From IMG/VR virus record IMGVR_UViG_3300042465_005589, positions 186,001-250,000 of that record: a stretch of 64,000 nucleotides of DNA; one strand, given 5' to 3'. Under the pieces are notes generated by a model. It ran no database searches, was not told the origin of the DNA, and worked only from the letters and a program-made list of their open reading frames with translations. This document shows, one piece after another, positions 41,047-60,077 of the stretch; position 1 is the stretch's first letter; every line of letters starts with the position of its first letter. The position numbers and the translations under genes are program-made.

Positions 41047-42027
41047 ATGATTTTTGTTACAGCACAACCTGATGTACCTTATTTCCATTGGCAAATAATG
41101 GTGTATATACACAACTTTATTGAACATGGTGTTCCTCCAAATCAAATCCACGTATTACTTGGAATAATAAATGAAGATGGTAAACCAACTGAAGAATCTT
41201 TAAAATTAAAAGATTCCGGAGTTAACGTACATTATTATATCGATAATAGACCTCAAAAACATTACATCCCAACAGTTAAACCCTTTTTAATTTCAAAATG
41301 GTTAAAAGATTTTCCTGAACATGGTAAATGTTTCTTCTTACATGACTCTGACATTATATTCAGAAAATTACCAAATTTTGATAGTTTATTAAATGATGAT
41401 ATTACATATTTATCCGACACAATAGGATATATTGGTTATAGATATATTATGGATTGTTGTGAACGTTATGAAAATGCTCACCCAACATCAGGTAAAGGTC
41501 AATTATTAGAAGAAATGACCGATGTTGTTGGCGTTTCAGTTGAGTGTATTGAATGTAATCAAGAAAATTCGGGAGGTGGTCAATACTTAATTAAAAACAC
41601 CGATTGGTTATTATGGGAAAAAATATACGCAGATTGCGTTCCACTGTATGACCAAATGTTAGACTATCAAAAAAGATTTCCAATTAGTCCAGGCGAAATT
41701 CAATTTTGGACCGCCGAGATGTGGTCACTATTATGGAATTTGTGGTTACATGGAATTGAGACAAAAATAACCCCTGAATTTGATTTTTCATGGGCAACAG
41801 ATTCAATAAAAATATATGAAGATAAACCTATTCTTCACATGGCAGGAGTAACAGATAATCAAAAACAAGATAAATTTTATAAAGGAGATTTTATTAATCT
41901 TAACCCATTAGACAAATTAAAAGAGAATATTAATTTTTTCGATTATGTCAGTTCTCAGAGTTCAACAAAAAAATATGTAGAAGTTATGAAATCTTTGGTG
42001 AAAAAACAAATAAAGGATTATTTATAG
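41047..42027 (+). CDS. GT-A glycosyltransferase resembling plant peptide O-glycosyltransferases SGT1 (GT96) / HPAT (GT95)
   Basis: YFHWQ, KPFLISKWL, LHDSDIIFR (DxD), GGGQYL, WTAEMW and ILHM occur in the same order as the motifs I recall for SGT1/HPAT. Confidence 0.7.
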   Translation: MIFVTAQPDVPYFHWQIMVYIHNFIEHGVPPNQIHVLLGIINEDGKPTEESLKLKDSGVNVHYYIDNRPQKHYIPTVKPFLISKWLKDFPEHGKCFFLHDSDIIFRKLPNFDSLLNDDITYLSDTIGYIGYRYIMDCCERYENAHPTSGKGQLLEEMTDVVGVSVECIECNQENSGGGQYLIKNTDWLLWEKIYADCVPLYDQMLDYQKRFPISPGEIQFWTAEMWSLLWNLWLHGIETKITPEFDFSWATDSIKIYEDKPILHMAGVTDNQKQDKFYKGDFINLNPLDKLKENINFFDYVSSQSSTKKYVEVMKSLVKKQIKDYL

Positions 42028-42047
42028 TATAACAGAAACAAATTATA

Positions 42048-44291
42048 ATGATATATTATTTTCAAACATGTTGTGTCAAATTTAACGAATCCGACAATTA
42101 TTTCGGAGTAAATGACATTACATTAATATTACCTATTTTAGGGGAAGTTTATTCTATTGAAACCCTTTCATTTAGTGGGTGCGCTTATTTAATATCAGGA
42201 CCAATCCCATCAGGGTCGTTAATTTACGCAGGGAATAAAACTATCTCAACATTATATAACGATTGTCAAGATTGTTTGGATAACGCTTATGGTTGTTTTC
42301 CTCCTCCTCCTCCACAGCCAGCAATTAGTTATATTCAATCCAATGAATGTGATGTAATTACATTATTTCCAATGACTGTTGAATGTGATGTTATTAATCC
42401 TTCAACTGCAGGTAGTCGTGATGGTAGAGCATCTATATCTATAACAGGAGGAACACCTCCATATACAGTTACTTGGGGTGATGGTAGTATTTCACCTGCT
42501 ATCATGGATTTACAATCGGGTTCATATCCAGCAACTATTGTTGATTATTATGGTGATTTTACCGCCAATACAATATGCGTATTAACAGGACCAACCGCAA
42601 CACCAACACCTACATTAACCAAAACCCCAACACTAACACCAACACCAACACTAACGGTTACACCAACATTAACTAGAACTCCAACACTAACACCTACATT
42701 AACTACAACACCTACGGTTACACCTACATTAACACCTACATTAACATCAGGAATACCACCAACACCAACAATTACCCAAACTATAACACCTACATTGACT
42801 ATAACACCTACATTAACCAAAACACCAACACCTACCCCAACACCAACAATAACAATAACACCAGAAGTACCATCATACAACGAAACATTCACAATGATTG
42901 CAAGAAGTTTGAATAGTTTTGCCCCTGTTAGTGGTTTTGAATTTAGAATTGACGCATCACTGCCATTTAGAATTGTTTGGGGTGATGGTAATACAGATAA
43001 TTACCCTTCAGGTATTAATTATATATCACACATATATTCAACACCTTATACTGGAAATATATTAATTCAAACATCAAATTTAACATCTATAACCCAAATT
43101 ATACCTAAAAATGTTAACCCTCAAATAAATGAGAATAGTGTTAGATATTTAGAAATTGAAACTTCTCAATTAAATCTTTTAGATGGGTTAGTTGGAATGG
43201 GTGACGGTAATGGACTAAATTATTTTTTATCAGGTGATATAAGTTTATTACCGACAACATTATTATCATTAATTTCACGGTGGTCTAATTGTTCAGGTAA
43301 TATTGCAAATTTACCACCTAATATACAATATTTTCATATTAATTTGTTCTTTAATAATTATCCAAACCAATTAAATACTATTTCAGGAAATGTTTCTAAT
43401 TTACCAACAACATTAAAAACTATTATTTTAGGTGGTATAAATACCATAACAGGTAATATAAATAATATTCCTTGCCCATCACTTGAAAAAATTATGATTG
43501 CTGGTTCAAACACTATTACCGGTGATATATCATTAATGTCGACACCTAATTTAGATACCATAAATATATATGGTAATAACACAATATTTGGTGATTTAGG
43601 CGGATTATCAAATAGTGTTATGGATATAAGATTGGCTGGTGGAAATACTGTTACTGGTGATATATCAACATTACCAACAAGTTTATCACACATTTATGTT
43701 GAAGGTACTAATACTCTTTATGGTAATATTAACACATTAAACTATTCAATATTATCAACTTTACAAATTTATGGAAATAATAATATTACTGGTAATATTA
43801 GTTCATTAAATTTAAAACTAGGAGCGATTTTTGAGTTAAAGGGTAACAATACATTAACTGGTAATATTGGTAGTATAGGTAGTACTTATAACTATAACCA
43901 ACTAGCTATATACGGTAACAACACAATTTATGGTAATATTCAAGATTTACCTTCTAATTCAAAAAATGTTAGAATACAAGGTAATAACGTCATTTCAGGT
44001 GATTTATCATTAGTTCATTTAAATATCCAATATTTATATATATACGGTAACAACACAATATCAGTATTCTCAAATAGTACAAGAATTTTTACAGATTTAA
44101 GAATAATTGAAATAGTGGGAAGCGGCTTTAATAGTACTAATGTTGATAAATTATTAACAAGTTATGCTAATTCAACTTGGGTTAGTAGTAAATTATTAAA
44201 AATAAAAGGCACATCATCACCTAAATACACAAACACTTCATCATACAACACACTTCAAACAACAAAAGGAGTGGGAATAACAATATCATAA
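42048..44291 (+). CDS. Modular tail appendage protein: Cys domain, SprB repeat, Pro-Thr linker, PKD-like domain, LRR solenoid
   Basis: DGRASISITGGTPPYTVTWGDG; about 90-aa TPT tract; IVWGDG..HIY; repeats IYGNNTITGNISSL; late motif at 42019-42026. Confidence 0.8.
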   Translation: MIYYFQTCCVKFNESDNYFGVNDITLILPILGEVYSIETLSFSGCAYLISGPIPSGSLIYAGNKTISTLYNDCQDCLDNAYGCFPPPPPQPAISYIQSNECDVITLFPMTVECDVINPSTAGSRDGRASISITGGTPPYTVTWGDGSISPAIMDLQSGSYPATIVDYYGDFTANTICVLTGPTATPTPTLTKTPTLTPTPTLTVTPTLTRTPTLTPTLTTTPTVTPTLTPTLTSGIPPTPTITQTITPTLTITPTLTKTPTPTPTPTITITPEVPSYNETFTMIARSLNSFAPVSGFEFRIDASLPFRIVWGDGNTDNYPSGINYISHIYSTPYTGNILIQTSNLTSITQIIPKNVNPQINENSVRYLEIETSQLNLLDGLVGMGDGNGLNYFLSGDISLLPTTLLSLISRWSNCSGNIANLPPNIQYFHINLFFNNYPNQLNTISGNVSNLPTTLKTIILGGINTITGNINNIPCPSLEKIMIAGSNTITGDISLMSTPNLDTINIYGNNTIFGDLGGLSNSVMDIRLAGGNTVTGDISTLPTSLSHIYVEGTNTLYGNINTLNYSILSTLQIYGNNNITGNISSLNLKLGAIFELKGNNTLTGNIGSIGSTYNYNQLAIYGNNTIYGNIQDLPSNSKNVRIQGNNVISGDLSLVHLNIQYLYIYGNNTISVFSNSTRIFTDLRIIEIVGSGFNSTNVDKLLTSYANSTWVSSKLLKIKGTSSPKYTNTSSYNTLQTTKGVGITIS

Positions 44292-44292
44292 A

Positions 44293-45318
44293 ATGGAATA
44301 TAATTTTTGTCTAAATATTAGTATTAATAACTTACAAATTCATTTTAACCCAAATGGATTAGATGTTAATGGATATAATCAATGGGTATCTGATGATTAC
44401 ACATATTCAATTAATTGGGACACCTCATTAAGTAGATGGAAATTGAATGGTGGTAATCTAACTTATTTGGTGTTTTCTTCTTTACCATCTTCTGTACCCC
44501 CTCTTAACTCTTGGTATGTATTAGGTGCTAACGGAACTGTTTATGCTAACGAAGGTGTTTGTAATCCATTAGGTATTAATTCATTAACCTATAGTGTTAA
44601 TCAACCAATATGTTCATGTGATGGTAATTTAATGGTAACTGTTTCAGGTGGTTACCCACCATATCAATATTCAATTGATAATGGTGTTACGTATTATAAT
44701 TCACCAATGTTTAGTCAATTATGTTCAGGAATTTATAGCGTTAAAGTTATTGATGTAAGTGGAAACACTAATAGTGATAATGTAACATTAAATGAACCTA
44801 CACCACCAACAGTTTATAGTGTAAAATTAACAACAACATCAACAAATCCGGTTAATAATAATACAACGTTGACTAATCAATATACAACAACGGTTAGTGT
44901 ATCACCTGAATTACCAAGTGGTACTGTAATCAATTTTAACATATCACACAATAACAAATTTTACTATTCTCCAAGTGGTATAACTGCAAGTTTGGTTACT
45001 AGTAGTGCCTTATATAAAAATGATAATTTAATACTAACCACATCAAACGGTACTGTAACATCAGATGCAAATTTTAATACAATTCAAGGATGTCAAAACT
45101 TAATAAAGTATTTAGATTTCTATACCGAAACTTGGAACTCATTAACCTTTACAAATTCAGATTCAATTGTTATTAACACGGTTACAACAATAACTAACAA
45201 TGGACCATTAACACCTTGTACGTATACATTAAGTGAGGACTTATATAATATATACAACGCAACTATAAGTGGTTGTGGATGTTGTGTAGTAGAAATTATT
45301 AACGTTAATCAAAAATAA
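44293..45318 (+). CDS. Tail-associated protein with an SprB-like repeat
   Basis: CSCDGNLMVTVSGGYPPYQYSIDNG...LCSGIYSVKVID; C-terminal CGCC. Confidence 0.78.
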   Translation: MEYNFCLNISINNLQIHFNPNGLDVNGYNQWVSDDYTYSINWDTSLSRWKLNGGNLTYLVFSSLPSSVPPLNSWYVLGANGTVYANEGVCNPLGINSLTYSVNQPICSCDGNLMVTVSGGYPPYQYSIDNGVTYYNSPMFSQLCSGIYSVKVIDVSGNTNSDNVTLNEPTPPTVYSVKLTTTSTNPVNNNTTLTNQYTTTVSVSPELPSGTVINFNISHNNKFYYSPSGITASLVTSSALYKNDNLILTTSNGTVTSDANFNTIQGCQNLIKYLDFYTETWNSLTFTNSDSIVINTVTTITNNGPLTPCTYTLSEDLYNIYNATISGCGCCVVEIINVNQK

Positions 45319-45343
45319 AAAAAAATAAGAATATTTATATCAC

Positions 45344-47809
45344 ATGGGATACATATTAAAAAATACACAAGGTTTACTTAGTACAAGACTAACTGATACC
45401 GGAAGACAAAAATTATCACAGGGTAGTTTTAATATCTCTTATTTTCAAGTAGGAGATAGTGAGGTTTCTTACAATACATTAACAGGAACGTCATACAACC
45501 AATTTACCACAAAAATTCTTGAACCAGCCTTTAACGCTCAAAATTCGACAGGAGCACCTGAATATAACAAACAAAACGTTAAATACCCATACTATATTGA
45601 TGGAATAACAGGTAACACTTATGGAATCCCATACATGGCGTCTATCCCTCAATCGGTATATAATAGAGCCGCAATGAGAGGATTTTTCACCGGAGACACA
45701 ACCGCAACAACTTTCACATGGAGCGCATTAACAAATAGCCAATATACAATTAATTCTAACTATCTCGTAGATATGTCTACATTAACGGGTGGTAGTGTTA
45801 TTCAATTAGTATATTCAGGGTGTAATTCAAATATTGTAAGATTACCATCTATTGGTGACTTTGTTACAATATATTATGATGGTCAAGGAGAATACAATTG
45901 TTATTGTGAACCAGGATTAACACCTACCCCAACCTATACCCCAACATCAACTTACCAAGTCACTAATACACCAACACCAACTCCAACACCAACATATACA
46001 GGATGTGAAACACCAACTCCAACACCAACCCCAACAATAAGTTGTTCTACAACACCTGTACCTACCCCAACACCACCAAATTGTGAGATGTCAATGAGTA
46101 GTTGTTATTCAATCTTAACTTATAAAATTGTAGATATTTGTAACGGTAACTATACATTAGATAGACCTACACCTGATTTTTCAAACTTTTCAAGTGGATG
46201 TTTTGCCAGAGTATTAGTATATCCGCCAAACATGACAACATTATATGACAGTATCACACCTAACTCACATTGGAATCAAAATGTTATTAATTTTGAATCT
46301 TTATGTAGTACAGATGAATCAGATGTTAAAATTTGGAATATGAACATTCCCTGGTCTGAAGACCCTGCCGGTTTATATAATTCAACATATAAAGGTTATC
46401 CTTACTTTGGTTCGGCGTCTTATATGGGTAGTAAAGAATACTTTGGATATATGTCCGATAGTGGTCAAACAGATACTGGAGTTGTTTATTACTATAACTC
46501 ATTTGACGAGACAGTAGTTGTTCAACCTAGTGAACAAAAATCTATAGCAATTATTCATTATACTAATCAAGCGATTGATTTCTTTTATGGTGAAAAATTC
46601 GCCTTTGAACCTTACGACCCGGCAAACCCTTCTGATACAACAGGAGAAGCCCGCAATTTTAGATTACACTTGCCGTGGTTAATGTGGCATAAAAATCCAA
46701 ATTGTTGTAAAGGTCAAACATTTTGGGTTGACCCACCAGGATTTGATGAATATCTATTATTCCAACCATATTACATTGAGTCAACTAAAAATAGTGATAT
46801 GAATACTCCCGGTATTAGATATTACCAACTATGGGACACTAATGCGAATGATAATGGATTACCAAGTAGAATCGGTAAAGTATTCCCTGATTCACAAATT
46901 ATTGTAATTGATGATGAAGAAATTATTGCCGCTATGTCTTACAAGTCAAATCGTAATTGGACATTACCGGCACCTAAGGTTTCATTAACAACACCAAATA
47001 CTTGTGTGGTTGAAAATAATCAACCTGTTGTAAAAGGTATTTTAAGTGCTAACACTGAATATATGTACGTTACTTACAGATTTAGTAATACCGATATTTT
47101 TACAAATTCATTACACTGTAATTATTATACTAAAATTCAAGGACCTAACATTGATTGTGGTTCAGTTGCGTCACAAAACGTTTCCATTAGATTTGGTGCG
47201 GAATTCCCTTGTTTAAATCAACCTGTTGTTATCCCAACAACTACAACAACAACTACAACAACCACAACATTATGTCCATCATGTGATATAATAACAGGGT
47301 TCTACGCAGACACATTACAAATTATTTGTCAAAAAGTTATTGGTACAAGTAGACCTGACCCAGCTGAATGGAAAATTATTGATTTTACCTCACAGATAAG
47401 CGCAACAACAATTAATGGATATCTAACCGTAGATAGTTTAACAGGAACCACATTTACAATCACTGAAGAAAACTACGCAGCCGCTGACGATTATGATTTA
47501 AACGATTTTATTCCATTAGTACCTAACGGAACAACAACACCTTCATTAAATTTTGGAGATGAATATTATTTCTATGGTTCATTAGAAACCGATATCCAAG
47601 CAACCATTTATGAAATGAAATATAAAATAAATCTTGGACAAGCCGAGTTTCAATCAACCTCAAACCCTACATGGACTAAGGGGACAAATTCATATATTAC
47701 AGAAATTGGTCTTTACGATTCTGATATGAACCTTATGATTGTATCAAAGCTACAATCCCCTGTATTAAGACAAGGTATTCAACAGTTTTTAGTTAAATTT
47801 GATTTCTAA
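45344..47809 (+). CDS. Tail-collar / baseplate fibre-attachment protein with Pro-Thr and poly-Thr inserts
   Basis: N-terminal LTDTGRQKL..GSFNISYFQVGDSEVSY; C-terminal YITEIGLYD..MIVSKLQSP; late motif at 45332-45339. Confidence 0.7.
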   Translation: MGYILKNTQGLLSTRLTDTGRQKLSQGSFNISYFQVGDSEVSYNTLTGTSYNQFTTKILEPAFNAQNSTGAPEYNKQNVKYPYYIDGITGNTYGIPYMASIPQSVYNRAAMRGFFTGDTTATTFTWSALTNSQYTINSNYLVDMSTLTGGSVIQLVYSGCNSNIVRLPSIGDFVTIYYDGQGEYNCYCEPGLTPTPTYTPTSTYQVTNTPTPTPTPTYTGCETPTPTPTPTISCSTTPVPTPTPPNCEMSMSSCYSILTYKIVDICNGNYTLDRPTPDFSNFSSGCFARVLVYPPNMTTLYDSITPNSHWNQNVINFESLCSTDESDVKIWNMNIPWSEDPAGLYNSTYKGYPYFGSASYMGSKEYFGYMSDSGQTDTGVVYYYNSFDETVVVQPSEQKSIAIIHYTNQAIDFFYGEKFAFEPYDPANPSDTTGEARNFRLHLPWLMWHKNPNCCKGQTFWVDPPGFDEYLLFQPYYIESTKNSDMNTPGIRYYQLWDTNANDNGLPSRIGKVFPDSQIIVIDDEEIIAAMSYKSNRNWTLPAPKVSLTTPNTCVVENNQPVVKGILSANTEYMYVTYRFSNTDIFTNSLHCNYYTKIQGPNIDCGSVASQNVSIRFGAEFPCLNQPVVIPTTTTTTTTTTTLCPSCDIITGFYADTLQIICQKVIGTSRPDPAEWKIIDFTSQISATTINGYLTVDSLTGTTFTITEENYAAADDYDLNDFIPLVPNGTTTPSLNFGDEYYFYGSLETDIQATIYEMKYKINLGQAEFQSTSNPTWTKGTNSYITEIGLYDSDMNLMIVSKLQSPVLRQGIQQFLVKFDF

Positions 47810-47815
47810 TAAAAT

Positions 47816-48415
47816 ATGAAAAAAACACTTAAAGAAAGTCCTAAAGTATTAGGACTTGATGTTTCAACTAAAACTATTGGTTGGGCATTATTTGATATAC
47901 AAAGTAGAGAATTACTCGAATTAACACATATATCTCCCGTACCAAAACCAAAAGAAGAAAACAAAATAAAAGAGTTACTTCTAAAAGGAGAAATTTTCAG
48001 AAGTAAACTTTTAGAATACAAAGATATGGGTATCACTAAAGTAATTATCGAGGAACCTTTATTAAACTCAAACAATGTTTATACAGTTCAAACGTTATTA
48101 AGATTCAACACTTTAATTACAAAAGAAATATATGACGTTTTAGGTGTAGTACCTGATTTCATATCAACATACAATTCTCGTAAGTTCGCCTTTCCGGAAT
48201 TAACTCAATTAAATGATAAAGGTAAATACGTACTATTTGGAGGTCTTCCTAAAGACATTGATAAGAAAATGATTATATGGGACCTAATTGCAAAAAGAGA
48301 ACCTCAAATCACTTGGTTATACACAAGAAACAATACCCTTAAAAAAGAAAACTTTGACCAAACAGATGCTTATTGTTGTGTTATAGGTCATATGAAACAA
48401 GAAAAAATATGGTAA
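47816..48415 (+). CDS. ruvC: RuvC-like Holliday junction resolvase
   Basis: VLGLDVSTKTIGWA, VIIEEP, DQTDA. Confidence 0.85.
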   Translation: MKKTLKESPKVLGLDVSTKTIGWALFDIQSRELLELTHISPVPKPKEENKIKELLLKGEIFRSKLLEYKDMGITKVIIEEPLLNSNNVYTVQTLLRFNTLITKEIYDVLGVVPDFISTYNSRKFAFPELTQLNDKGKYVLFGGLPKDIDKKMIIWDLIAKREPQITWLYTRNNTLKKENFDQTDAYCCVIGHMKQEKIW

Positions 48416-48449
48416 AATAAAAAACCCCTCTTAACGGAGGGGTTTTTTA
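48416..48449. terminator. Bidirectional terminator between the convergent blocks
   Basis: aaaacccctc ttaacg gaggggtttt. Confidence 0.85.
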
Positions 48450-51400
48450 TTATTGACATACTCCTGAATTTACATGAATTTCTAATGTTGATGTTGCTGC
48501 AACAGTAACATTATAAAATTGAACTTGATAATAACCGGGAGTTGTAATTGGGGCGATTTCACTCGCATAAAGTGAAGCATCCACATATAATAAAACACAT
48601 TGTGAGTTTGCCACACTAGATAAGAGTGTCACAGTTAAATTTTGATTAACTAACCCTAATTGAGCACCCAATAAAGGATTTGACACAGTTACTGGGAAAC
48701 TATATGAACTATCATATAGATAAAACGTCTGTGGTTGGATATTTGTAACTTGAGATTCTTCTTTTTGAATACTAACAAGGAAATTTCTTGGTTTTTCAAT
48801 ATTAATATCACTCTCACATTCTAGACAACAATCTTCAGATGAATAAATTGTATTACTAATTGTTGTGAAATAATTAGTATTATAAATCTGAACATTTAAT
48901 TGAGGTGGTAATGTTGGTTCTCCATTATAAATATTTTTTAATTTCCAACACGATACATCACCTCTAACGTCAGTAGAACTAAATCCATCACCAATTAATA
49001 AATTAGGTAATACTAATATAGGTTGTAATATATAATATGGCTCACCATCCTCTCCAAGAATACACGATGCGTATAAATACCACAATGGTAATGGTGTTGG
49101 TGTAACCGTTGGTGTAACAGTTATTGTTGGCGTAACAGTTATTGTTGGTGTAACAGTTGGGGTTGATGTAGGGGTTGGTGTTAATGTTAATGTTGGAGTT
49201 ATAGTTGGCGTTACAGTTATTGTTGGTGTTGGAGGTAATCCAGGTGTCCACGTCGGGGTTAATGTTGGTGTAACAGTTAATGTTGGTGTCACAGTTAATG
49301 TTGGAGTTATAGTTAAAGTTGGTGTTATAGTTATTGTTGGTGTTGGTGTAGGAGCTAAACCACAATATTGACATGAGATATTATACTCAATAAACACATT
49401 AACATTAACATCTGTTGCTACCAAATATTGTTCTTCACATTTTGCAATTATTTGAATCCCATTATTTAATGGGTCAATATTAACTTGAGCAACTTGGTCA
49501 AAACTTTCTAATAAAGCAACTAAAGCGTTAAAATATTCTTCATCAGTTGGATAATGGTTTAAAGCATAACTTGTATAAAATTCTGAAGTTTCTGTTACAC
49601 TACCAATAGTTGCAACAATATTAAAGATTGCTTGATTAAGTAAACAATTAGTATAACCGGAAGTTAAATCATAATAACCCTCATTTAACATTTCTTTTGG
49701 ACCTTTTTTAACTAATTCGTTAATATTTTCAAAATCACTATTACAAATATTAAACGTTTGAAATGATGATATTGAATCAAATCCATCAATTATCACTTGT
49801 CTAATTTTAACACATCCATCACTATCTGTCACTTGTAAACTATAAGTTCCAGCACTTAAGCTATTTAAATAATACCCTGTCTGCCCATTTACATTATTAC
49901 TCCATAATAAAGTAAAAGGTGGTGCACCATTTGTAATATATGCAGATACCGTACCATCATTACCATTATTGGCATCAGTACTAGATAATAAAAAATCAAC
50001 ATTTTCAGAGGTATCAATTACAAAATTAATAATTTGTGCACAACCCGGAACCGCATCATCAATTTCTGCTGCGTACACACCTGAAAATAAATTATTAAAT
50101 GTCGTTGCACTAGTTTGAATTATTTGTAATTCACTACCAATATTAACGGTATAAGGTGGTGTACCACCTGAAATACTAATCTCCACTGAACCATTTTGTA
50201 AATCACAAGTTGTACCTGTTGTACTCGCACTTAAAGTAAAAGGTGACGTAGATACTATTGTATATGAATTAGTATATACACAAGCACCATTATCAGATAT
50301 TGTTAAATCGTAAGTATCAGCCGCCAAATTAGTAAATTGCCAAACAGAAGAATTAGTTACTTGTGTTTGAGTGTCTCCATTTGAATTTACTAGTGTATAT
50401 GTGTAAGGAGATTGACCACCTAATAGAGTCATTTTTATTTTTCCATTATTTCCACAATCCGCATTAATTGTGTCAATAGTAATAATTGAAAACCCATTTG
50501 GCGTTAAGACCGATATTGACCCAACAACAGAACATAAAGCAGCATCAGTCACTTTTATAGAAAATAATCCTGAACCAATATTTTGAAAAGTTTGTGAAGA
50601 ACTAAATGAAACATTAATTTGACCTGTAGACGCAGAATAATAATATGGTCCTGTCCCTCCTGATATAGTTACCGTAACTTCACCATCAGATGAAAAACAA
50701 GACGGTGGTACGCTCGTTAAAATTGCCGCAACACCTAATGCCGGTACCAACCCTACTGTCGCACTTTGAGATAACGTACAATTAGTACTATCGGTTATAG
50801 TTACACTATACGTACCATTTGTTAACCCTGTAATAAAGTCAGTTGTTTCGTTATTTGACCATAAATAAGTAAACGGTGGGTTACCTGTTAAACCCGTCAC
50901 ATATATTTTACCAGATTCAACGCTATTACACCCCGAATCTTCAACAACATAAAAACCCCAAGTAAGAGATGATGACGATTTTATAATAATAGTTTCTGAC
51001 ATTCCTGTACAACCTCCACCATCATCGGCAACAACATAATAAATACCTGGCGATAACGCCGGTGGGGTTGTGAATGTATTATAACCCGTTGTAGCAGATG
51101 TTACAAACCCTGTTAATGTATTATATAAATAAAAATCAGCAGAACCATAGAAACTACTTGTTTGAGCCGTCAACGCCCCATTATTAAAACTACAGGTAGT
51201 ATTTTGTTGACCTATAATACTTACACATGTACCACTAGAAATATTAACATTTACCGGTAAGACATTTTGAGATGGTGATGAACAAGAATCGATAACATTA
51301 AAGGTATATGTACCCGCAGATAATGTTGTTGCGGTATATCCTGTCACACCAGAACCTAACGCTATTGTCCCTAAAGCGGGACTTATCCATTGTATAGTAT

Positions 51401-51500
51401 AATCCGGAGCAGTACCGTAGATATCTACACTAAAAACCCCTGAGTTTGTATTTGAACAATCTCCCGTTATACTTAAATTTACACTTAAACTACAAGCCAT
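48450..51500 (-). CDS. SprB-repeat tail protein with Pro-Thr linker and Cys-rich C-terminal domain
   Basis: Roughly eight C...G.I.V...GG..PY.Y.WS....L.AGTY...VTD units; TPT tract at about 49085-49350. Confidence 0.82.
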   Translation of the reverse strand: MACSLSVNLSITGDCSNTNSGVFSVDIYGTAPDYTIQWISPALGTIALGSGVTGYTATTLSAGTYTFNVIDSCSSPSQNVLPVNVNISSGTCVSIIGQQNTTCSFNNGALTAQTSSFYGSADFYLYNTLTGFVTSATTGYNTFTTPPALSPGIYYVVADDGGGCTGMSETIIIKSSSSLTWGFYVVEDSGCNSVESGKIYVTGLTGNPPFTYLWSNNETTDFITGLTNGTYSVTITDSTNCTLSQSATVGLVPALGVAAILTSVPPSCFSSDGEVTVTISGGTGPYYYSASTGQINVSFSSSQTFQNIGSGLFSIKVTDAALCSVVGSISVLTPNGFSIITIDTINADCGNNGKIKMTLLGGQSPYTYTLVNSNGDTQTQVTNSSVWQFTNLAADTYDLTISDNGACVYTNSYTIVSTSPFTLSASTTGTTCDLQNGSVEISISGGTPPYTVNIGSELQIIQTSATTFNNLFSGVYAAEIDDAVPGCAQIINFVIDTSENVDFLLSSTDANNGNDGTVSAYITNGAPPFTLLWSNNVNGQTGYYLNSLSAGTYSLQVTDSDGCVKIRQVIIDGFDSISSFQTFNICNSDFENINELVKKGPKEMLNEGYYDLTSGYTNCLLNQAIFNIVATIGSVTETSEFYTSYALNHYPTDEEYFNALVALLESFDQVAQVNIDPLNNGIQIIAKCEEQYLVATDVNVNVFIEYNISCQYCGLAPTPTPTITITPTLTITPTLTVTPTLTVTPTLTPTWTPGLPPTPTITVTPTITPTLTLTPTPTSTPTVTPTITVTPTITVTPTVTPTPLPLWYLYASCILGEDGEPYYILQPILVLPNLLIGDGFSSTDVRGDVSCWKLKNIYNGEPTLPPQLNVQIYNTNYFTTISNTIYSSEDCCLECESDINIEKPRNFLVSIQKEESQVTNIQPQTFYLYDSSYSFPVTVSNPLLGAQLGLVNQNLTVTLLSSVANSQCVLLYVDASLYASEIAPITTPGYYQVQFYNVTVAATSTLEIHVNSGVCQ

Positions 51501-54500
51501 TAATTACATAAAATTTCAAAATTTATTCCAACATTCAATTTAAAATTGATTCCCGAATCATTTACAGAACAAATTGAACTATAAACCATAACATTAGTAT
51601 CATTTAAAATATACTCAAAACCATACAAATCTAAACCATTTAAAGCGGGTATCAACGCCTCGTTCCATTGTTCTGTTGTTGGTGAACTCAAACCTGTATT
51701 AAGATAACCAATACCACTAAAAAATTCATATTGAACAATGTTAACATCATCAAGACTTAACACTACATACCAAGTACTAATTAAAGTATTTTGTAAACAA
51801 TCATTTAATTCATAACCTTGTGATGTTAAATAATTCCCTAACAAATAACCTAACACTGATTCAAATGATTGTAATTGTGGGTTACTTTGCCATGGATAAA
51901 TAGAACATTGAACTGATTGAACATAACAATCATAAGTGAAAAGATTACTAGTCATTGAACATGGGTTACATGGTACCGGAATTAATTGACAACCTTCTTG
52001 TCTTCTCCAAACAAATTTTTGTCTGTGAAATATTGAATTCTCATATTTAACACCTGTATTCCAAATAGTACTTGCTGGAATCATTTGTTCCACAAGTCTT
52101 ACCCAATAATCACCCATTCCGTCAACATATTCAATCATTTTACTATAATTGAAACTACCGTCAGGTACCCCCGCTAATTTCTGAGCATCTAAATATTTCC
52201 AATAAATCGACTGAAGAGTTGGATATCCCATAGTCTTACCATCAGTTGAAAATTGTCTATTTCTAACATTAATCATGTTTTTCCAAAATGTTTGAGCAAA
52301 CTCAAAAAATGTTTTACGTTTTGGTTGTGGATTTATTTCAGTCCAATCCACACCACCTCTCATCGGATAATTTGATATTGGATTTGGGTCACAATAAGTT
52401 GGTTGAACATAATTTAAACCCTCATTAGGGATTGGGAAATTATATTCTCTTGACATAACCCACACATCATAGGATAAACCTTGAGCCGGGTTTAAAAATA
52501 AATCGGTGTTTTTGGCATTAAGTACTAACGCATCGTTTGTTGTGTAATATCTCGCATTGTACCCCCCATCTAAATTTGAACGTAACCCAACTTCGGTATC
52601 AACCCAACTTTTATTATTATCAATAGTTTGTGTTAAGTTATACCCTAAATTCATAAAAGGGAACTGAGCAAACCTATCAAAATATTCTTGACCATAAGTA
52701 TATGGTGTCAAAACTGTTTGGTAATTAGGATTTGCACCTGTAAACACACTATTAGTATAACTGACTTCTTCCGGTGCTCGATGTTTTGGTGTCTGTTCAA
52801 ACCATCCACTACCTTTTTCAAAAAAATAATCATCAGTATTAACAGGGGCTTTAGGGAACCCTAAATCATCCATCGGATATTCATCTTTAGTTATGTTCAC
52901 ATCTTGAATTACTGTTGTCGTAGTAAATCCTGTATACGTATCTTGTCTAAACTTATATGTGTTACCAGCCTCTAATGTCGGTAATTCTTGAACATAAGTA
53001 CCACCTGATATTTGAGCAAATTGACTATTAAATTGATTAACATTAATTCTTTGGTCAGCCAAATAAATATACTCGTTAAATTCAACTAAAGCATCGGGAG
53101 CACCAATTAAAGCCATTAAAGTCTCTATTGATTTTCTAGTCCCCTTTGATTTAAACAAATAAGCCGAGTTTAATATTAAATTTCTATAGTATTGATAATT
53201 TAATTCATCAGGAGTAGTAGCGTCTGAAACACCAGGGTATTGAGATTTATCAGTATTTGTTTGACCAAAAACTGAACTTAAAAAATCATCGGTAGATACC
53301 GGAGACATATTTGTTTGCCAACCTAATGTTTGAGATAAATTTTTAAGTAACTGAGATGGTATATCATCACCCGGATTATAATGAACCGAATTCATAAACG
53401 CCAACGCACTTATAAATTTATTAGTTTCGTCAAAACTTCTACCATAAATTTGTAGAACTTTTTCCATTTTTTGACCTAACGTATCAAATTCTTGGAATGC
53501 CCCCGTAACTAAAAATCTTGAAATAATATTTGTTTTATAACCATCTAGTGATACACCAATATCATTTAATTGAATTAGATAATTAGTGAAAGCCTTTGTT
53601 ACAATATCTAAATTCCAAGACCCATTTAATGGAAATGTAATAAACTCTTGTGAAGAAAAATAGGTCCCGTCATCAGCCTCTCTCGGGACATTAAAACTTG
53701 CCGTATACTTTGGTGTAACATTCCTATTTAATAAGAAATTCTCAACTTCATCTAAATCTTCATTAAAAACTCTATTAACTTGATAATCATTTGGTCGAAT
53801 AACTAAATCATCAAACGTAAATGTTTGATTTGGAAAAGGGTCACCACTAACAGTAACATTTAAAGTTCCTGATGTAATAGACGTTGTTGGAATAATTGCC
53901 GTTACATCATAACCAATACCTTTATAGTATAAACTATAATAAGCATACTGAACTGTCATATCTCTAAGCGCCGATACTTGAATCTCTTTTAATGCAAGAT
54001 TTCTAGTTGAATTAATTGTAAAATCAATCGCAAATGGGTTTCTTAATCTAGAAACATCTAAATCAAAACTAGTTATATTATCAATTTGATTATAACTAAT
54101 ATTCGTTGCCGTCTCACCCTTAACATAATTTTCCCCCATTATCGTCGCCTCAAGAGCCGCAGGGAATTTGGATATAATTGTTTCAACAGAAGTTGAAAGT
54201 CTTTTAACTAATGAACCATATTGAGTAAAATTTGTAATTTGACTCAAATCAAAATTAGGGTAAACTTTAAAGTTATTTTCAAAAATTGCTCTTGATTGGA
54301 AAGTACTTTCTAAACCTAATCCTTCTAAACTAATTGGTTCCGAAAATGTTCCGGTATTAAAAGTTCTATTAGTCTTTTCATTAAAAGATGTCGCAAATTC
54401 AAAATTACCCTGTGTTAAACCACCCCCCGTAACTAGTTGGAAACCAACTAAGTCATCAGAGAATGAACTTGCACCGGAAGCACCTTGTGGTGGACATGTA

Positions 54501-54517
54501 AATTTTTGTAACGCCAT
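51500..54517 (-). CDS. Baseplate wedge-like structural protein
   Basis: YLFKSKGTRKSIETLMALIG resembles the baseplate wedge (P2 gpI / T4 gp7) motif. Confidence 0.65.
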   Translation of the reverse strand: MALQKFTCPPQGASGASSFSDDLVGFQLVTGGGLTQGNFEFATSFNEKTNRTFNTGTFSEPISLEGLGLESTFQSRAIFENNFKVYPNFDLSQITNFTQYGSLVKRLSTSVETIISKFPAALEATIMGENYVKGETATNISYNQIDNITSFDLDVSRLRNPFAIDFTINSTRNLALKEIQVSALRDMTVQYAYYSLYYKGIGYDVTAIIPTTSITSGTLNVTVSGDPFPNQTFTFDDLVIRPNDYQVNRVFNEDLDEVENFLLNRNVTPKYTASFNVPREADDGTYFSSQEFITFPLNGSWNLDIVTKAFTNYLIQLNDIGVSLDGYKTNIISRFLVTGAFQEFDTLGQKMEKVLQIYGRSFDETNKFISALAFMNSVHYNPGDDIPSQLLKNLSQTLGWQTNMSPVSTDDFLSSVFGQTNTDKSQYPGVSDATTPDELNYQYYRNLILNSAYLFKSKGTRKSIETLMALIGAPDALVEFNEYIYLADQRINVNQFNSQFAQISGGTYVQELPTLEAGNTYKFRQDTYTGFTTTTVIQDVNITKDEYPMDDLGFPKAPVNTDDYFFEKGSGWFEQTPKHRAPEEVSYTNSVFTGANPNYQTVLTPYTYGQEYFDRFAQFPFMNLGYNLTQTIDNNKSWVDTEVGLRSNLDGGYNARYYTTNDALVLNAKNTDLFLNPAQGLSYDVWVMSREYNFPIPNEGLNYVQPTYCDPNPISNYPMRGGVDWTEINPQPKRKTFFEFAQTFWKNMINVRNRQFSTDGKTMGYPTLQSIYWKYLDAQKLAGVPDGSFNYSKMIEYVDGMGDYWVRLVEQMIPASTIWNTGVKYENSIFHRQKFVWRRQEGCQLIPVPCNPCSMTSNLFTYDCYVQSVQCSIYPWQSNPQLQSFESVLGYLLGNYLTSQGYELNDCLQNTLISTWYVVLSLDDVNIVQYEFFSGIGYLNTGLSSPTTEQWNEALIPALNGLDLYGFEYILNDTNVMVYSSICSVNDSGINFKLNVGINFEILCN

Positions 54518-55431
54518 TATTCAGTTATGTTTGTAAAGTTTTTACTAAAATCAATATTATCTCCTCTATTTTGTCTAACTTCGTATAACAATGTATTAAA
54601 TTGGTCTCTAATTTCGTATAGATTATATTGTTGGTAAATGTTGTTATTTGTATCATAAATCGTGTAAATACCATCATCCATAGATTTAGTCTGATTACCA
54701 TAAAGAGCAATAGCCAATGTTGAGAAATCTTGGTCTGCAATCTCGATATCAAGAGTGATAGGATTAAAGAAGGTATTAGACATTATAATATTTTGATTTG
54801 GCTGTCCAATATATGGTGTCGCATTTGGTTTGTTTGTCGGAGATGACGACGGAGAAACTGTACAAAAGATTATATTTGTATTATTGTCTGTATATCTATA
54901 TCTTATTGCTTTTTGTGATGTATTTGTCAAATTTTGAACAACTGGTTCACAAAAGAATGATGATGTAACAATTCTAAAGAAATTAGGTATTTTTGTTCCA
55001 TCAGAGTTTAAATACTCAATTCTAAAACCAACTAAACCTTGATTAACAAATTTATTTCTAAATTGACTTGGGACATCGTTCAAATCAATTATAATTCCTT
55101 TTACGTTAGGTAATGATGATAACACACCACAATCTAAAATACTCGTTCTAATCTCCGCTGGTCTAATATATAAGGTGTAGATACCCAATTGGTTAAATTG
55201 TTCTGCAGGCAGTCTTAAATTGTATAACCCACCTAATATTTCTACATTAGGGTTTGGACTTGAACTCGTTTGTTGATTATTAAAATAAGGTCTTAATATT
55301 GATACAGCATCTAATTTTGTTAATACAAAATTATCTGTTTCATCTCTTGATGGTGTATAATTAAGAATGATGTCCACATCTTCTGGTGATACATCTGCGG
55401 GTCTTATTGTACCATAGGTGCCAGTACTCAT
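54517..55431 (-). CDS. Structural protein (baseplate region)
   Basis: 304-aa ORF translationally coupled within the tail operon. Confidence 0.7.
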   Translation of the reverse strand: MSTGTYGTIRPADVSPEDVDIILNYTPSRDETDNFVLTKLDAVSILRPYFNNQQTSSSPNPNVEILGGLYNLRLPAEQFNQLGIYTLYIRPAEIRTSILDCGVLSSLPNVKGIIIDLNDVPSQFRNKFVNQGLVGFRIEYLNSDGTKIPNFFRIVTSSFFCEPVVQNLTNTSQKAIRYRYTDNNTNIIFCTVSPSSSPTNKPNATPYIGQPNQNIIMSNTFFNPITLDIEIADQDFSTLAIALYGNQTKSMDDGIYTIYDTNNNIYQQYNLYEIRDQFNTLLYEVRQNRGDNIDFSKNFTNITE

Positions 55432-56210
55432 ATAATTTCTTTTTTTATAATTTTATTTTTTCTTTTATCAACAACAATAATTTCAACAGGTAAAACATTT
55501 TCATTGACCCATTTTATTTTCATTAATTGATTAGTTTCTATTAGATTAGTAAAACGACTTTTTTCAACACCAATTAAAATATTATAAGTGTAATCAGATT
55601 TAATTTCTATTAATTTATTACCATATGAAAAATCAGGATAATAAACACCATAAGGTGTTATAATAGGTTCACAATTTTTGGGATATAAAATATTTTCATT
55701 GATTAATTTTTCAATGTAAAATTTTTCATAAGTACCCTGACATTTAATACCGTCAACATTAAAAATTTTACAAACACCACCGGTTTGTTTTCTATTACCA
55801 CTTTTACTCAATTTTTGTTGAGCAATTTTCATATTATTTTTAGTTTTTTGAGGTAATTTTTTACCTTTTCTATATTCAGAATTGGCTTCACTTTTACTTC
55901 TTCTATAATTAACTGTCCCAAGATATTTATTAATAAATGATTCTGTAAGATTTAGAGTATCACCAATTTCTTTACAATTTTTTTTCTCAATTATATATAA
56001 ATTTTTAATTATTTTTTTTTGTTCATTAGTTAATATAATTTTTTTTCCATTACTATAACCTTTTTTCAATAACCCTTCCTGCTTTAATATCTTAATAATA
56101 GGTGTTTTACTAACATCAAAAATTTTCCCAATGTGTGAGCAACTTAAACTATTAGAATAAAATTCTTTAATTTTTCCAATATCTTTTAATGTAAAAACAA
56201 TTTGTTTCAT
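55428..56210 (-). CDS. Putative homing endonuclease (HTH repeats plus PD-(D/E)XK)
   Basis: Two HTH-like segments, Lys-rich linker, QGTYE...YYPDF...LIEIKS; start at 56210. Confidence 0.75.
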   Translation of the reverse strand: MKQIVFTLKDIGKIKEFYSNSLSCSHIGKIFDVSKTPIIKILKQEGLLKKGYSNGKKIILTNEQKKIIKNLYIIEKKNCKEIGDTLNLTESFINKYLGTVNYRRSKSEANSEYRKGKKLPQKTKNNMKIAQQKLSKSGNRKQTGGVCKIFNVDGIKCQGTYEKFYIEKLINENILYPKNCEPIITPYGVYYPDFSYGNKLIEIKSDYTYNILIGVEKSRFTNLIETNQLMKIKWVNENVLPVEIIVVDKRKNKIIKKEII

Positions 56211-56235
56211 ATTGATAAATATCAATTTTATATTT

Positions 56236-60075: not shown

Positions 60076-60077
60076 AA

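What the first reader, a model, noticed from the sequence alone, without database searches (positions are those of the whole stretch)
42381..51470. Tail proteins built from SprB gliding-adhesin repeats
SprB-type units (C..DG.I.V...GG.PPY.Y.W...L.AG.Y.V.V.D) appear once in 42048-44291, once in 44293-45318 and roughly eight times in 48450-51500. SprB is the T9SS-secreted motility adhesin of gliding Bacteroidetes. The phage seems to have co-opted host adhesin stalk modules as fibre shafts, perhaps to mimic or engage the gliding machinery or to bind the same surfaces as the host.
Basis: partly seen in the sequence, partly recalled or inferred. Interest (0 to 1): 0.65.

Follow-up and report, generated by a model that had tools for sequence, protein, structure and literature searches.

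The report
Phage tail fibres with SprB-type domains
A 318-kb lake-water jumbo phage that probably infects Bacteroidota carries three genes next to its baseplate genes whose products contain the same Ig-like repeat module as the giant secreted adhesins (SprB type) of that phylum; this is a host-flavoured version of the well-known use of Ig-like domains on phage particles, and nothing shows that it mimics the gliding machinery.

Summary
The repeats are real. The product of 48450-51500 (minus strand, 1016 aa) starts with seven, not eight, tandem units of about 80 aa. It passes Pfam's SprB model (54.7 bits, cut-off 28). Single units sit in 42048-44291 and 44293-45318; both are borderline with Pfam but clear with a full-length unit profile. 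That profile, built from the phage units alone, retrieves giant Bacteroidota proteins with 30-88 units and type IX secretion sorting domains. T5 pb10, a generic phage Ig domain, fails the SprB model. So the relationship is specific.

The genes end a gp25-like/gp6-like baseplate operon, which supports a tail location by synteny only. The phage proteins have no signal peptide and no sorting domain. Their nearest 120 relatives share one phage-type architecture, identities to bacterial units are low, and no close bacterial homologue was found. This is old domain sharing, not a recent capture of SprB.

The array and a middle domain are conserved. The part beyond a Pro/Thr linker is swapped among relatives, and these proteins evolve faster than their neighbours. 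The best reading is modular receptor-binding fibres. This is a new member of a known kind, of moderate interest.

The parts
48450..51500 (-). P0003, 1016 aa: SprB-type array protein and last gene of the baseplate-wedge gene train
   Evidence: ORF; Pfam SprB 54.7 bits; orthologues on phage contigs with the same neighbours
49782..51500 (-). Seven tandem SprB-type Ig-like units (residues 1-573: u1 1-90, u2 91-177, u3 178-252, u4 253-334, u5 335-418, u6 419-498, u7 499-573)
   Evidence: Unit profile scores 67-90 bits per unit. The AlphaFold2 model of u4-u5 has pLDDT 90.3 and shows two seven-stranded beta sandwiches. All Cys are conserved in at least 98% of 118 orthologues.
49365..49781 (-). Conserved middle domain (residues 574-712), always found with the array
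   Evidence: Present in all full-length orthologues at 36-92% identity. Modelled with low to middling confidence. IMG/VR matches end at about residue 715.
49101..49364 (-). Pro/Thr-rich linker (residues 713-800)
   Evidence: Translation; 6/12/18-nt DNA periodicity; pLDDT below 50; many contig ends and loose ends fall here in lake runs
48450..49100 (-). Variable beta-rich C-terminal domain (residues 801-1016), the candidate receptor-binding tip
   Evidence: pLDDT 80-94. Identity is 44-82% where the array is 83-90%. In other relatives it is absent or replaced by unrelated modules, in at least 20 classes. No clear structural match.
42048..44291 (+). P0001, 747 aa: N-terminal Cys-rich domain, one SprB-type unit, Pro/Thr linker, LRR-like C-terminal half
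42360..42593 (+). Single SprB-type unit of P0001 (residues 105-182)
   Evidence: 73 bits with the unit profile; 26.3 bits with Pfam SprB, below the cut-off; 42% identical over 71 aa to a bacterial unit, E 7e-13; conserved at 58-94% in relatives with other architectures
42594..42842 (+). Pro/Thr linker of P0001. Its DNA forms an inverted repeat with the P0003 linker.
   Evidence: Arms 42590-42863 and 49252-49357 are 74-94% complementary
43230..44120 (+). LRR-like repeats of about 23 aa in P0001 (approximate limits)
   Evidence: Pfam LRR_4 18 bits, below the cut-off, at residues 477-522; DNA repeat family D3; read directly from the translation
44293..45318 (+). P0002, 341 aa, with one SprB-type unit at residues 93-170 (DNA 44569-44802)
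   Evidence: 89 bits with the unit profile; Pfam SprB 24.0 and 28.7 bits; 48% identical over 62 aa to a bacterial unit
45344..47809 (+). P0004, 821 aa, same cassette: Pro/Thr linker (about 45911-46084) but no SprB unit
   Evidence: it travels with P0001 and P0002 in all relatives
41047..42027 (+). 326-aa ORF, first gene of the cassette (phrog_4417, function unknown)
   Evidence: conserved at 93-94% in relatives where the P0003 core is 67-69%
47816..48415 (+). 199-aa ORF, last gene of the cassette
   Evidence: Weak phrog_159 (RuvC-like) match, E 9.6e-5; 97% conserved in the 68% group
51500..54517 (-). P0005, 1005 aa, immediately upstream of P0003 with overlapping stop and start; no family match
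   Evidence: only a weak Atlas lead to a baseplate-wedge cluster; 90-92% conserved in the 68% group
54517..64000 (-). Upstream part of the same gene train (304, [HNH 265], 407, 266, 607 and 1762 aa; the last runs off the window). It continues to the gp6-like and gp25-like baseplate wedge genes 2.4-4.7 kb beyond the window end.
   Evidence: ORF map. Baseplate_J 36.9 bits at genome 252647-253177. phrog_219 and phrog_261/43 'baseplate wedge subunit'. Sheath-like match of 30.5 bits (cut-off 31.4) at genome 282 kb.

Best explanation
P0003, P0001 and P0002 are most likely baseplate-associated fibre or adhesin proteins of a freshwater jumbo myophage that infects Bacteroidota.

In P0003, seven disulfide-stabilised SprB-type Ig-like beta sandwiches form a beads-on-a-string shaft. 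At an assumed ~4 nm per Ig-like domain (not measured here), the shaft would be about 25-30 nm long if extended. A conserved 140-aa domain follows, then a flexible Pro/Thr linker and an exchangeable C-terminal domain that would recognise the host surface. P0001 and P0002 use one such unit as a spacer between a conserved N-terminal part and other C-terminal modules; in P0001 that module is LRR-like.

The Ig module belongs to the same family as the repeats of giant T9SS-secreted adhesins of Bacteroidota, such as SprB, and resembles in fold the Ig-like repeats of GhpA. It has been inherited within this phage lineage for a long time.

Shown: family membership of the module, the fold, gene position, the mosaic C-termini and fast divergence. 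Inferred: presence in the virion, attachment to the baseplate, the disulfides and receptor binding.
For: Module identity:
- Pfam SprB matches.
- The reciprocal profile search finds 85,409 proteins. The top ones are giants with 30-88 units and T9SS sorting domains. Relatives of one such giant lie in Bacteroidota genomes.
- The T5 pb10 control fails SprB.

Fold:
- Two 7-stranded sandwiches, pLDDT 90.
- The best Foldseek matches are the Aureispira GhpA grappling hook, whose stem is made of Ig-like repeats with intramolecular disulfides.
- All 19 Cys of the P0003 core are conserved in at least 98% of 118 orthologues.

Tail context:
- P0003 is the last gene of a train that starts with gp25-like and gp6-like wedge genes.
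- The same order is seen in 40 related phage loci.

Receptor-binding hallmarks:
- The core of residues 1-712 is conserved. The tail after the linker is absent in 27 of 120 relatives and falls into at least 20 unrelated classes in the rest.
- Tail modules are shared between the P0003 and P0001 families at 73-79% identity.
- The P0003 core is 67-69% identical where neighbours are 87-99%.
- Identical and ~86%-identical alleles coexist in single lake samples.

Host:
- No Shine-Dalgarno motifs (4 of 220 ORFs) and A-rich leaders.
- A bS21 gene, as in the freshwater Bacteroidetes phages of 10.1101/2021.10.11.463225.
- The window sequence is held by 24 lake-water runs.
Against: - There is no direct evidence that any of these proteins is in the virion.
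- No family or fold match links them or their immediate neighbours to known fibre proteins.
- No trimerisation motif or fibre chaperone was found. Ig arrays are usually monomeric, more like decoration proteins.
- The best sequence matches of the unit profile among solved structures are a capsid decoration protein (T5 pb10) and a neck whisker protein.
- 27 of 120 orthologues end right after the middle domain, so a C-terminal 'tip' is not obligatory.
- The C-terminal domain has no recognisable binding fold.
Confidence: 0.6

Rival explanations
1. These are accessory decoration or whisker proteins of the Hoc/pb10 type. In this reading they are dispensable Ig-like adhesins on the capsid, neck or tail. 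They would bind polysaccharide, mucus-like particles or host exopolymer weakly, raising the encounter rate rather than determining host specificity.
For: - Among solved structures, the unit profile's best sequence matches are T5 decoration protein pb10 (34 bits) and a neck whisker protein gp24 (32 bits).
- P0002 has a weak PHROG 'Hoc-like head decoration' match.
- Ig arrays are typical of such proteins.
- 27 of 120 orthologues consist of the array plus middle domain only.
Against: - The gene sits at the end of the baseplate-wedge train, not with head genes.
- There is no pb10_N-like or Hoc-like capsid-binding domain.
- The swapped C-terminal modules and the markedly faster divergence than neighbours fit a specificity determinant better.
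Confidence: 0.25
2. The phage SprB-type domains would specifically engage or mimic the gliding apparatus. One route would be lateral homotypic association with host SprB-type filaments, using the moving adhesin as receptor and conveyor.
For: - SprB and RemA are thought to act as phage receptors in Flavobacterium johnsoniae, and phage resistance maps to gliding and T9SS genes (PMC9804748; 10.1101/2020.10.02.323337).
- The Ig-like repeats of GhpA associate laterally into a heptameric stem.
- The phage units belong to the same family as the bacterial repeats.
Against: - There is no specific similarity to any one bacterial protein. Mean identity to bacterial units is 28%, and the best is 58% over 59 aa.
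- No close bacterial homologue was found.
- The array is the conserved part and the C-terminus the variable one. This points to the C-terminus, not the Ig array, as the recognition element.
- The host is unknown, and so is whether it glides.
Confidence: 0.07
3. These are host-derived secreted adhesin genes (morons). In this reading they would be expressed on the infected cell surface to alter adhesion or motility, or to exclude other phages, and would not be virion parts.
For: The domain repertoire (SprB-type Ig, Pro/Thr linkers, LRR-like repeats, and Fib_succ_major in relatives) resembles that of Bacteroidota surface proteins.
Against: - No signal peptide is visible at any of the three N-termini (read directly).
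- No C-terminal CHU_C or Por_Secre_tail domain is present. The Por_Secre_tail hits in orthologues fall inside the Ig units.
- The genes are embedded in, and co-oriented with, the baseplate operon in 40 loci.
Confidence: 0.04
4. The repeats are generic Ig or PKD domains with no particular relationship to SprB.
For: - Structure alone cannot tell the unit from FN3 or Ig tandems (Z about 10 to many of them).
- T5 pb10 shares the GG.PY.Y.W / G.Y.V.V.D motif and scores 34 bits with the phage unit profile, close to the bacterial median of 42 bits.
Against: - P0003 matches SprB alone among Ig-type Pfam families, with no Ig_2, Ig_3, I-set or PKD hit at E < 0.1. pb10 passes those three Ig models and fails SprB.
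- The phage profile covers the full 74-aa bacterial unit, including the paired Cys, in 6,639 units of 150 giants.
Confidence: 0.04

Closest known systems
SprB repeat family (Pfam PF13573), as in giant T9SS-secreted adhesins of Bacteroidota such as SprB of Flavobacterium johnsoniae
   Same: - The same ~74-aa Ig-like module with the C..DG / GG.PY.Y.W / G.Y.V.V.D..C signature and paired cysteines, in tandem arrangement.
- The profile match works in both directions.
   Different: - The phage proteins are 341-1016 aa with 1-7 units, against thousands of residues and 30-88 units.
- They have no signal peptide and no T9SS sorting domain.
- The gene context is a phage baseplate.
- Units are divergent, 24-33% mean identity to bacterial units.
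GhpA grappling-hook protein of Aureispira (PDB 9flw, 9flp and others; 10.1101/2024.01.29.577165)
   Same: - Best Foldseek matches of the modelled units (E 1.7e-6 to 7e-5, 15-21% identity).
- Its stem is built of Ig-like repeats with intramolecular disulfides. It is a T9SS substrate of Bacteroidota that its authors compare with SprB.
   Different: - GhpA has 5,898 aa and 52 repeats, is heptameric, secreted and anchored in the outer membrane.
- The oligomeric state of the phage proteins is unknown.
- Fold similarity to FN3 and Ig tandems is equally high by Z-score.
Ig-like domains on phage structural proteins (T4 Hoc, T5 pb10, lambda J, major tail proteins)
   Same: - Ig-like beta-sandwich modules are displayed on virion proteins.
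- pb10 and a neck whisker protein are detectably similar in sequence, and lambda J in fold.
- The accessory adhesion role is discussed widely (for example PMC9271167 and PMC13370021).
   Different: - Those domains belong to the I-set, Ig_2, Ig_3, Big_2 or FN3 families; pb10 fails the SprB model.
- Here seven units make up most of a protein that also carries exchangeable C-terminal modules and sits in the baseplate operon.
Modular receptor-binding tail fibres with a conserved N-terminus and exchangeable C-terminus (general phage principle, from established knowledge)
   Same: - Conserved core and mosaic C-terminal part.
- Modules are shared between two fibre gene families.
- Fastest-evolving genes of the locus.
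   Different: - No trimeric beta-helix, coiled-coil shaft or chaperone gene was recognised.
- The junction is a Pro/Thr linker of the kind seen in bacterial surface and carbohydrate-active proteins.

Membership tests
Pfam PF13573 SprB repeat (domain family) | Score at or above the curated cut-off of 28 bits | tested here: met
   - P0003: 54.7 bits; single stretches of 40.4 and 31.0 bits.
- P0002: 24.0 bits and 28.7 bits, borderline.
- P0001: 26.3 bits, below the cut-off.
- Orthologues of all three carry precomputed PF13573 hits.
Pfam PF13573 SprB repeat (domain family) | Reciprocity: a profile of the candidate units retrieves accepted SprB-repeat proteins over the whole unit | tested here: met
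   85,409 hits, with the top 150 having 30-88 stretches. Pfam SprB plus CHU_C or Por_Secre_tail in the C-termini that were checked. 6,639 units with a median of 42 bits, of which 2,713 are full length with a median of 74 aa.
Pfam PF13573 SprB repeat (domain family) | Distinct from generic Ig families (I-set, Ig_2, Ig_3, PKD) | tested here: met
   P0003 has no hit to those families at E < 0.1. The control T5 pb10 passes Ig_3, Ig_2 and I-set and fails SprB at 25.5 bits.
SprB protein proper (gliding motility adhesin of Flavobacterium johnsoniae and its orthologues) | C-terminal T9SS sorting domain (type B, CHU_C-like) | tested here: not met
   No CHU_C or Por_Secre_tail in P0001-P0003. The Por_Secre_tail hits in orthologues lie inside the Ig units at residues 350-565.
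SprB protein proper (gliding motility adhesin of Flavobacterium johnsoniae and its orthologues) | N-terminal Sec signal peptide | tested here: not met
   Judged by reading the N-termini only. P0003 starts directly with unit 1, and none of the three shows a charged n-region followed by a hydrophobic h-region. No predictor was available.
SprB protein proper (gliding motility adhesin of Flavobacterium johnsoniae and its orthologues) | Giant size with dozens of repeats (about 6,500 aa, as cited) | tested here: not met
   341-1016 aa with 1-7 units
SprB protein proper (gliding motility adhesin of Flavobacterium johnsoniae and its orthologues) | Bacterial chromosomal context with spr and gld genes; role in gliding | tested here: not met
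   The context is a phage baseplate operon in a 318-kb virus record. A role in gliding cannot be tested here.
Phage tail fibre / receptor-binding protein | Gene within or at the end of the tail or baseplate module | tested here: met
   The train runs gp25-like, gp6-like, 304, 1762, 607, 241-266, 407, (HNH), 304, 1005 and 1016 aa on one strand. The order is conserved in 40 loci.
Phage tail fibre / receptor-binding protein | Conserved virion-proximal part, polymorphic distal part, faster evolution than neighbours | tested here: met
Phage tail fibre / receptor-binding protein | Physical presence in the virion and binding to a host receptor | not testable with these tools
   There is no isolate and no proteome. 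Metagenome runs are held as contigs only.
Phage tail fibre / receptor-binding protein | Sequence or fold homology to a characterised fibre or tip domain | tested here: not met
   No PHROG or Pfam tail-fibre family. No tblastn match in 50,697 phage records apart from one uncultured 642-kb phage. No clear PDB or BFVD match for the C-terminal domain.
Hoc/pb10-type capsid decoration proteins | Ig-like domain(s) joined to a capsid-binding domain homologous to Hoc or pb10_N | tested here: not met
   Ig-like domains are present, but there is no Phage_pb10_N or Hoc family match (compare the control). The 'Hoc-like' PHROG match of P0002 (E 0.009) covers the Ig unit only.

The most novel reading that the evidence does not exclude
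The phage's SprB-type array might be more than a passive shaft. It could dock laterally, Ig domain against Ig domain, onto the host's own SprB-type surface filaments, much as GhpA protomers zip into a stem. The phage would then ride the moving gliding adhesin to the cell surface. A family of abundant freshwater jumbo phages would thereby use homotypic recognition of a host motility adhesin.
Probability: 0.07. Interest if true: 0.8.

Novelty: new member of a known kind. Interest (0 to 1): 0.4.

Why it matters
The finding adds a host-phylum-specific Ig family to the catalogue of Ig-like modules on phage particles. It also gives an independent host clue (Bacteroidota) for an abundant group of uncultured lake jumbo phages.

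It marks a compact cassette of three to four fast-evolving genes as the likely host-range determinants. In this cassette, conserved SprB-type and Pro/Thr scaffolds carry interchangeable C-terminal modules.

This makes host recognition in these phages testable once a host is cultured. It also offers natural examples of short, disulfide-bearing SprB-type arrays that are easier to express and solve than the giant bacterial adhesins.

It does not change the general picture of how phages use Ig-like domains.

Tried and rejected
1. **Bacterial look-alikes.** I first read the 52-58%-identical hits with 'PF18962' as bacterial T9SS proteins, which would have meant recent host-to-phage transfer. I rejected this. 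P0088 sits on a 282-kb phage contig with the same neighbours, and the Por_Secre_tail hits are internal cross-hits on the Ig units.
2. **Close bacterial homologue of P0003.** None was found among the genomes of 185,579 species. The search uses exact peptide patterns and so sees close relatives only.
4. **Programmed inversion between the linker repeats.** An inversion between the inverted Pro/Thr-linker repeats (42590-42863 and 49252-49357) would swap the C-termini of P0001 and P0003.
   - No chimeric proteins appear among close orthologues.
   - No strand-changing joints appear among the best-supported joints in four lake runs.
   - The 6,000-letter limit prevented laying both arms at once, and contigs drop rare variants, so this is weak negative evidence.
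   - What does occur over evolutionary time is exchange of tail modules between the two families and inversion of the whole 326-P0001-P0002-P0004-199 cassette.
5. **C-terminal and middle domains of P0003.** Fold searches gave nothing above background: Foldseek PDB E > 0.001 and VIA-wide Z at most 7.0 to generic adhesin or pilin sandwiches. BFVD and the ESM Atlas returned only uncharacterised or 'SprB repeat' viral proteins.
6. **Neighbours.** No PHROG or Pfam families for P0004, P0005 and most other neighbours. No tblastn match in GenBank phages. Only a weak Atlas feature lead for P0005, and PF23786 is absent.
7. **Not run.** No complex prediction was made, because no specific binding pair is claimed.


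Full report
**What the window is.** The window is bases 186001-250000 of a 318,164-bp IMG/VR virus record that CheckV rates complete. GC content is about 31%. The region below 33.3 kb encodes replication and repair genes: SbcC-like, primase and exonuclease. From 33.4 kb onward there are long ORFs with almost no family matches. Twenty-four lake-water metagenome runs hold the flagged stretch.

**The observation.**
- P0001: 42048-44291 (+), 747 aa.
- P0002: 44293-45318 (+), 341 aa.
- P0003: 48450-51500 (-), 1016 aa.

Pfam's SprB model (PF13573, cut-off 28 bits) scores as follows:

| Protein | hmmscan | Six-frame scan |
|---|---|---|
| P0003 | 54.7 bits, five stretches | best single stretch 40.4 bits |
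| P0002 | 24.0 bits | 28.7 bits |
| P0001 | no hit | 26.3 bits |

The Pfam model covers only 37 residues, so I aligned the whole units and built a profile from them. The profile finds seven tandem units in P0003 (residues 5-573, 67-90 bits each) and one each in P0001 and P0002. It finds nothing else in the 318-kb genome. Units are 15-36% identical to each other.

**Is it SprB-type or a generic Ig domain?** Four tests bear on this.

1. At E < 0.1, P0003 hits SprB and no Ig_2, Ig_3, I-set or PKD model.
2. The profile made only from the nine phage units was run against 1.84 billion representative proteins.
   - It finds 85,409 proteins. The top 150 are giants of 2,510-7,585 aa with 30-88 matched stretches.
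   - Eight of ten C-termini that I checked carry CHU_C or Por_Secre_tail sorting domains, alongside Pfam SprB repeats.
   - A repeat segment of one such giant finds relatives in 80 genome loci. By their titles, 77 are Bacteroidota lineages such as Lewinellaceae, Saprospiraceae, Chitinophagales, Flavobacteriales and Crocinitomicaceae.
3. Single phage units reach 40-58% identity to the best bacterial units. On a fair sample, mean identities are 27.8% phage to bacterial, 23.7% phage to phage and 37.8% bacterial to bacterial. The phage units are divergent members of the bacterial family.
4. The control is the Ig domain of T5 decoration protein pb10. It is the best sequence match of the unit profile among solved structures (34 bits). 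It passes Ig_3, Ig_2 and I-set but fails SprB at 25.5 bits.

The families are plainly related, however. Structure alone cannot separate them: Foldseek ranks the GhpA grappling hook first, while many FN3 and Ig tandems reach Z of about 10.

**Fold.** Units 4-5 were modelled with an alignment of 29 orthologues. The model has pLDDT 90.3 and shows two seven-stranded sandwiches. The GhpA paper describes a stem of 52 Ig-like repeats with intramolecular disulfides and likens GhpA to SprB. All 19 cysteines in residues 1-712 of P0003 are conserved in at least 98% of 118 orthologues whose overall identity is 45-90%. This suggests one disulfide per unit; that is inference.

**Not SprB itself, and not a recent capture.** P0001-P0003 have no CHU_C or Por_Secre_tail domain and, on reading the N-termini, no signal peptide.

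The 120 best relatives of the P0003 array all share the phage-type architecture of seven units followed by the middle domain. Every context I examined is a phage contig with the same neighbours. The 'Por_Secre_tail' annotations on some orthologues are internal cross-hits on Ig units.

A pattern search of the genomes of 185,579 species found no close bacterial homologue. In GenBank phages only one record matches, an uncultured 642-kb phage at 31% identity. BFVD already holds an 'uncultured Caudovirales phage' protein auto-named 'SprB repeat', and the ESM Atlas has several all-viral clusters with PF13573. I found no paper that discusses SprB repeats in phages.

**Tail context.** Just beyond the window end lie a gp25-like gene (phrog_261 and phrog_43) and a gp6/Baseplate_J-like gene (PF04865 36.9 bits; phrog_219). 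They are followed on the same strand by ORFs of 304, 1762, 607, 241-266, 407, 260-265 (HNH-like), 304, 1005 (P0005) and 1016 aa (P0003). A sheath-like match lies at genome position 282 kb, at 30.5 bits against a cut-off of 31.4. P0003 is thus the terminal gene of a baseplate-wedge train, the classical place for fibres. This is evidence from synteny only.

**Signs of a host-interface role.**
- *Conserved core, mosaic tail.* The array and the middle domain (residues 1-712) are the conserved core. IMG/VR matches stop at about residue 715 unless the phage is very close.
- *Variable tail.* After the Pro/Thr linker, the tail is 44-82% identical where the array is 83-90%. Across the 120 relatives it is absent in 27 and falls into at least 20 unrelated classes in the rest.
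- *Shared modules.* Tail modules are shared between the P0003 family and the P0001 family, at 73-79% identity over 81-90 aa. There are also Fib_succ_major-type tails on both scaffolds.
- *Shuffled spacer unit.* The N-terminal domain and unit of P0001 occur fused to LRR-type, P0002-like or P0003-C-like parts in different phages.
- *Fast divergence.* In the relatives whose neighbours are 87-99% identical, the P0003 core is only 67-69%, P0002 73-79% and the P0001 N-terminus 71-77%.
- *Within the array.* Unit 5 varies most. Unit 1 is the best conserved in distant relatives.
- *Coexisting alleles.* In single lake runs, pieces identical to the window coexist with ~86%-identical alleles of the array. 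Many contigs break at the linker.

**C-terminal domain.** The model is confident for residues 804-1016 (pLDDT 80-94) and poor for the middle domain. No convincing match was found in PDB, BFVD or the ESM Atlas.

**Host.** Only 4 of 220 ORFs have GGAG or GAGG upstream, against a background of 4.4%. The leaders are A-rich at -14 to -10 and at -3. From established knowledge this fits Bacteroidota-style translation initiation. The genome also encodes ribosomal protein bS21. Freshwater jumbo myophages of up to 331 kb that carry bS21 have been predicted to infect Bacteroidetes (10.1101/2021.10.11.463225). Membership of that group was not tested.

**Mechanism.** The best-supported reading is a set of modular baseplate-associated fibres or adhesins. 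Disulfide-stabilised SprB-type Ig units and Pro/Thr linkers form the scaffold, and exchangeable C-terminal modules recognise the host (confidence about 0.6).

The gliding-machinery idea has circumstantial background. SprB and RemA are thought to be phage receptors, and phage resistance maps to gliding and T9SS genes. Nothing in this sequence speaks for it, and the variable element is the C-terminus, not the Ig array.

**Limits.**
- No virion data exist for this phage.
- No rooted unit phylogeny was made.
- The signal-peptide judgement was made by eye.

Noticed in passing
window 55428-56225 (-): An HNH-endonuclease-like ORF (phrog_8446, E 1.5e-6) sits inside the baseplate/fibre gene train. It is present only in the 100%-identical loci. 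It is absent from the 90% and 68% relatives. A 50%-identical homologue occupies the same position in L108 and L110. It looks like a mobile homing endonuclease.
   Followed up: partly
window 42590-42863 and 49252-49357; also 45926-46078: The Pro/Thr-linker coding DNA of P0001 and P0003 forms inverted repeats of 33-100 nt that are 74-94% complementary. P0004 carries a direct copy. Recombination here would swap C-terminal modules in frame. No chimeras or strand-changing joints were found, but the test was weak.
   Followed up: partly
window 41047-48415 compared with loci L008 and L097-L133: The whole cassette 326-P0001-P0002-P0004-199 is convergent with P0003 in the 100, 90 and 68% groups and in the 46-49% group. 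It is co-directional in the 50-55% group. The block has therefore inverted at least once in this phage family.
   Followed up: partly
window 47816-48415 (+): The 199-aa ORF at the cassette boundary has a weak RuvC-like resolvase PHROG match (E 9.6e-5, no stretch passing on its own). It is among the most conserved genes of the locus, at 97% in the 68% group.
   Followed up: no
whole genome (G000); ORF starts in the window: Shine-Dalgarno motifs are virtually absent (4 of 220 ORFs, below background). Leaders are A-rich at -14 to -10 and at -3. This pattern is typical of Bacteroidota and their phages.
   Followed up: yes
G000:C1:44411-44560 (+), outside the window: The phage encodes ribosomal protein bS21 (PF01165, 38.9 bits). 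This links it to the freshwater bS21-encoding jumbo phages predicted to infect Bacteroidetes (10.1101/2021.10.11.463225).
   Followed up: partly
window about 43230-44120 (+), P0001 residues about 395-690: About a dozen LRR-like repeats of roughly 23 aa (G-N-N-T-I-x-G-D-I type) form the C-terminal half of P0001. Pfam LRR_4 scores only 18 bits. This module is replaced by others in relatives.
   Followed up: partly
window 50022-51258, runs X11, X16, X20: In single lake samples, contig pieces identical to the window coexist with pieces that differ at about 14% of positions over the SprB array. Examples are 157 of 1108 and 132 of 943 letters. Distinct alleles or strains therefore co-occur.
   Followed up: partly
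window 36905-40795 (+): A 1296-aa ORF with no family match lies in the stretch with the highest GC content (0.36) and a strongly positive GC skew (+0.27), unlike the rest of the window. In relatives it is 1120-1491 aa long and lies next to the cassette.
   Followed up: no
G000:C1:254810-258176 (-), outside the window: The ribonucleotide reductase large and small subunit genes lie directly upstream of the gp25-like baseplate gene on the same strand. Further upstream are a DnaB-like helicase gene and, beyond a 150-aa ORF, an exonuclease gene. The baseplate operon is therefore embedded among nucleotide-metabolism genes.
   Followed up: no
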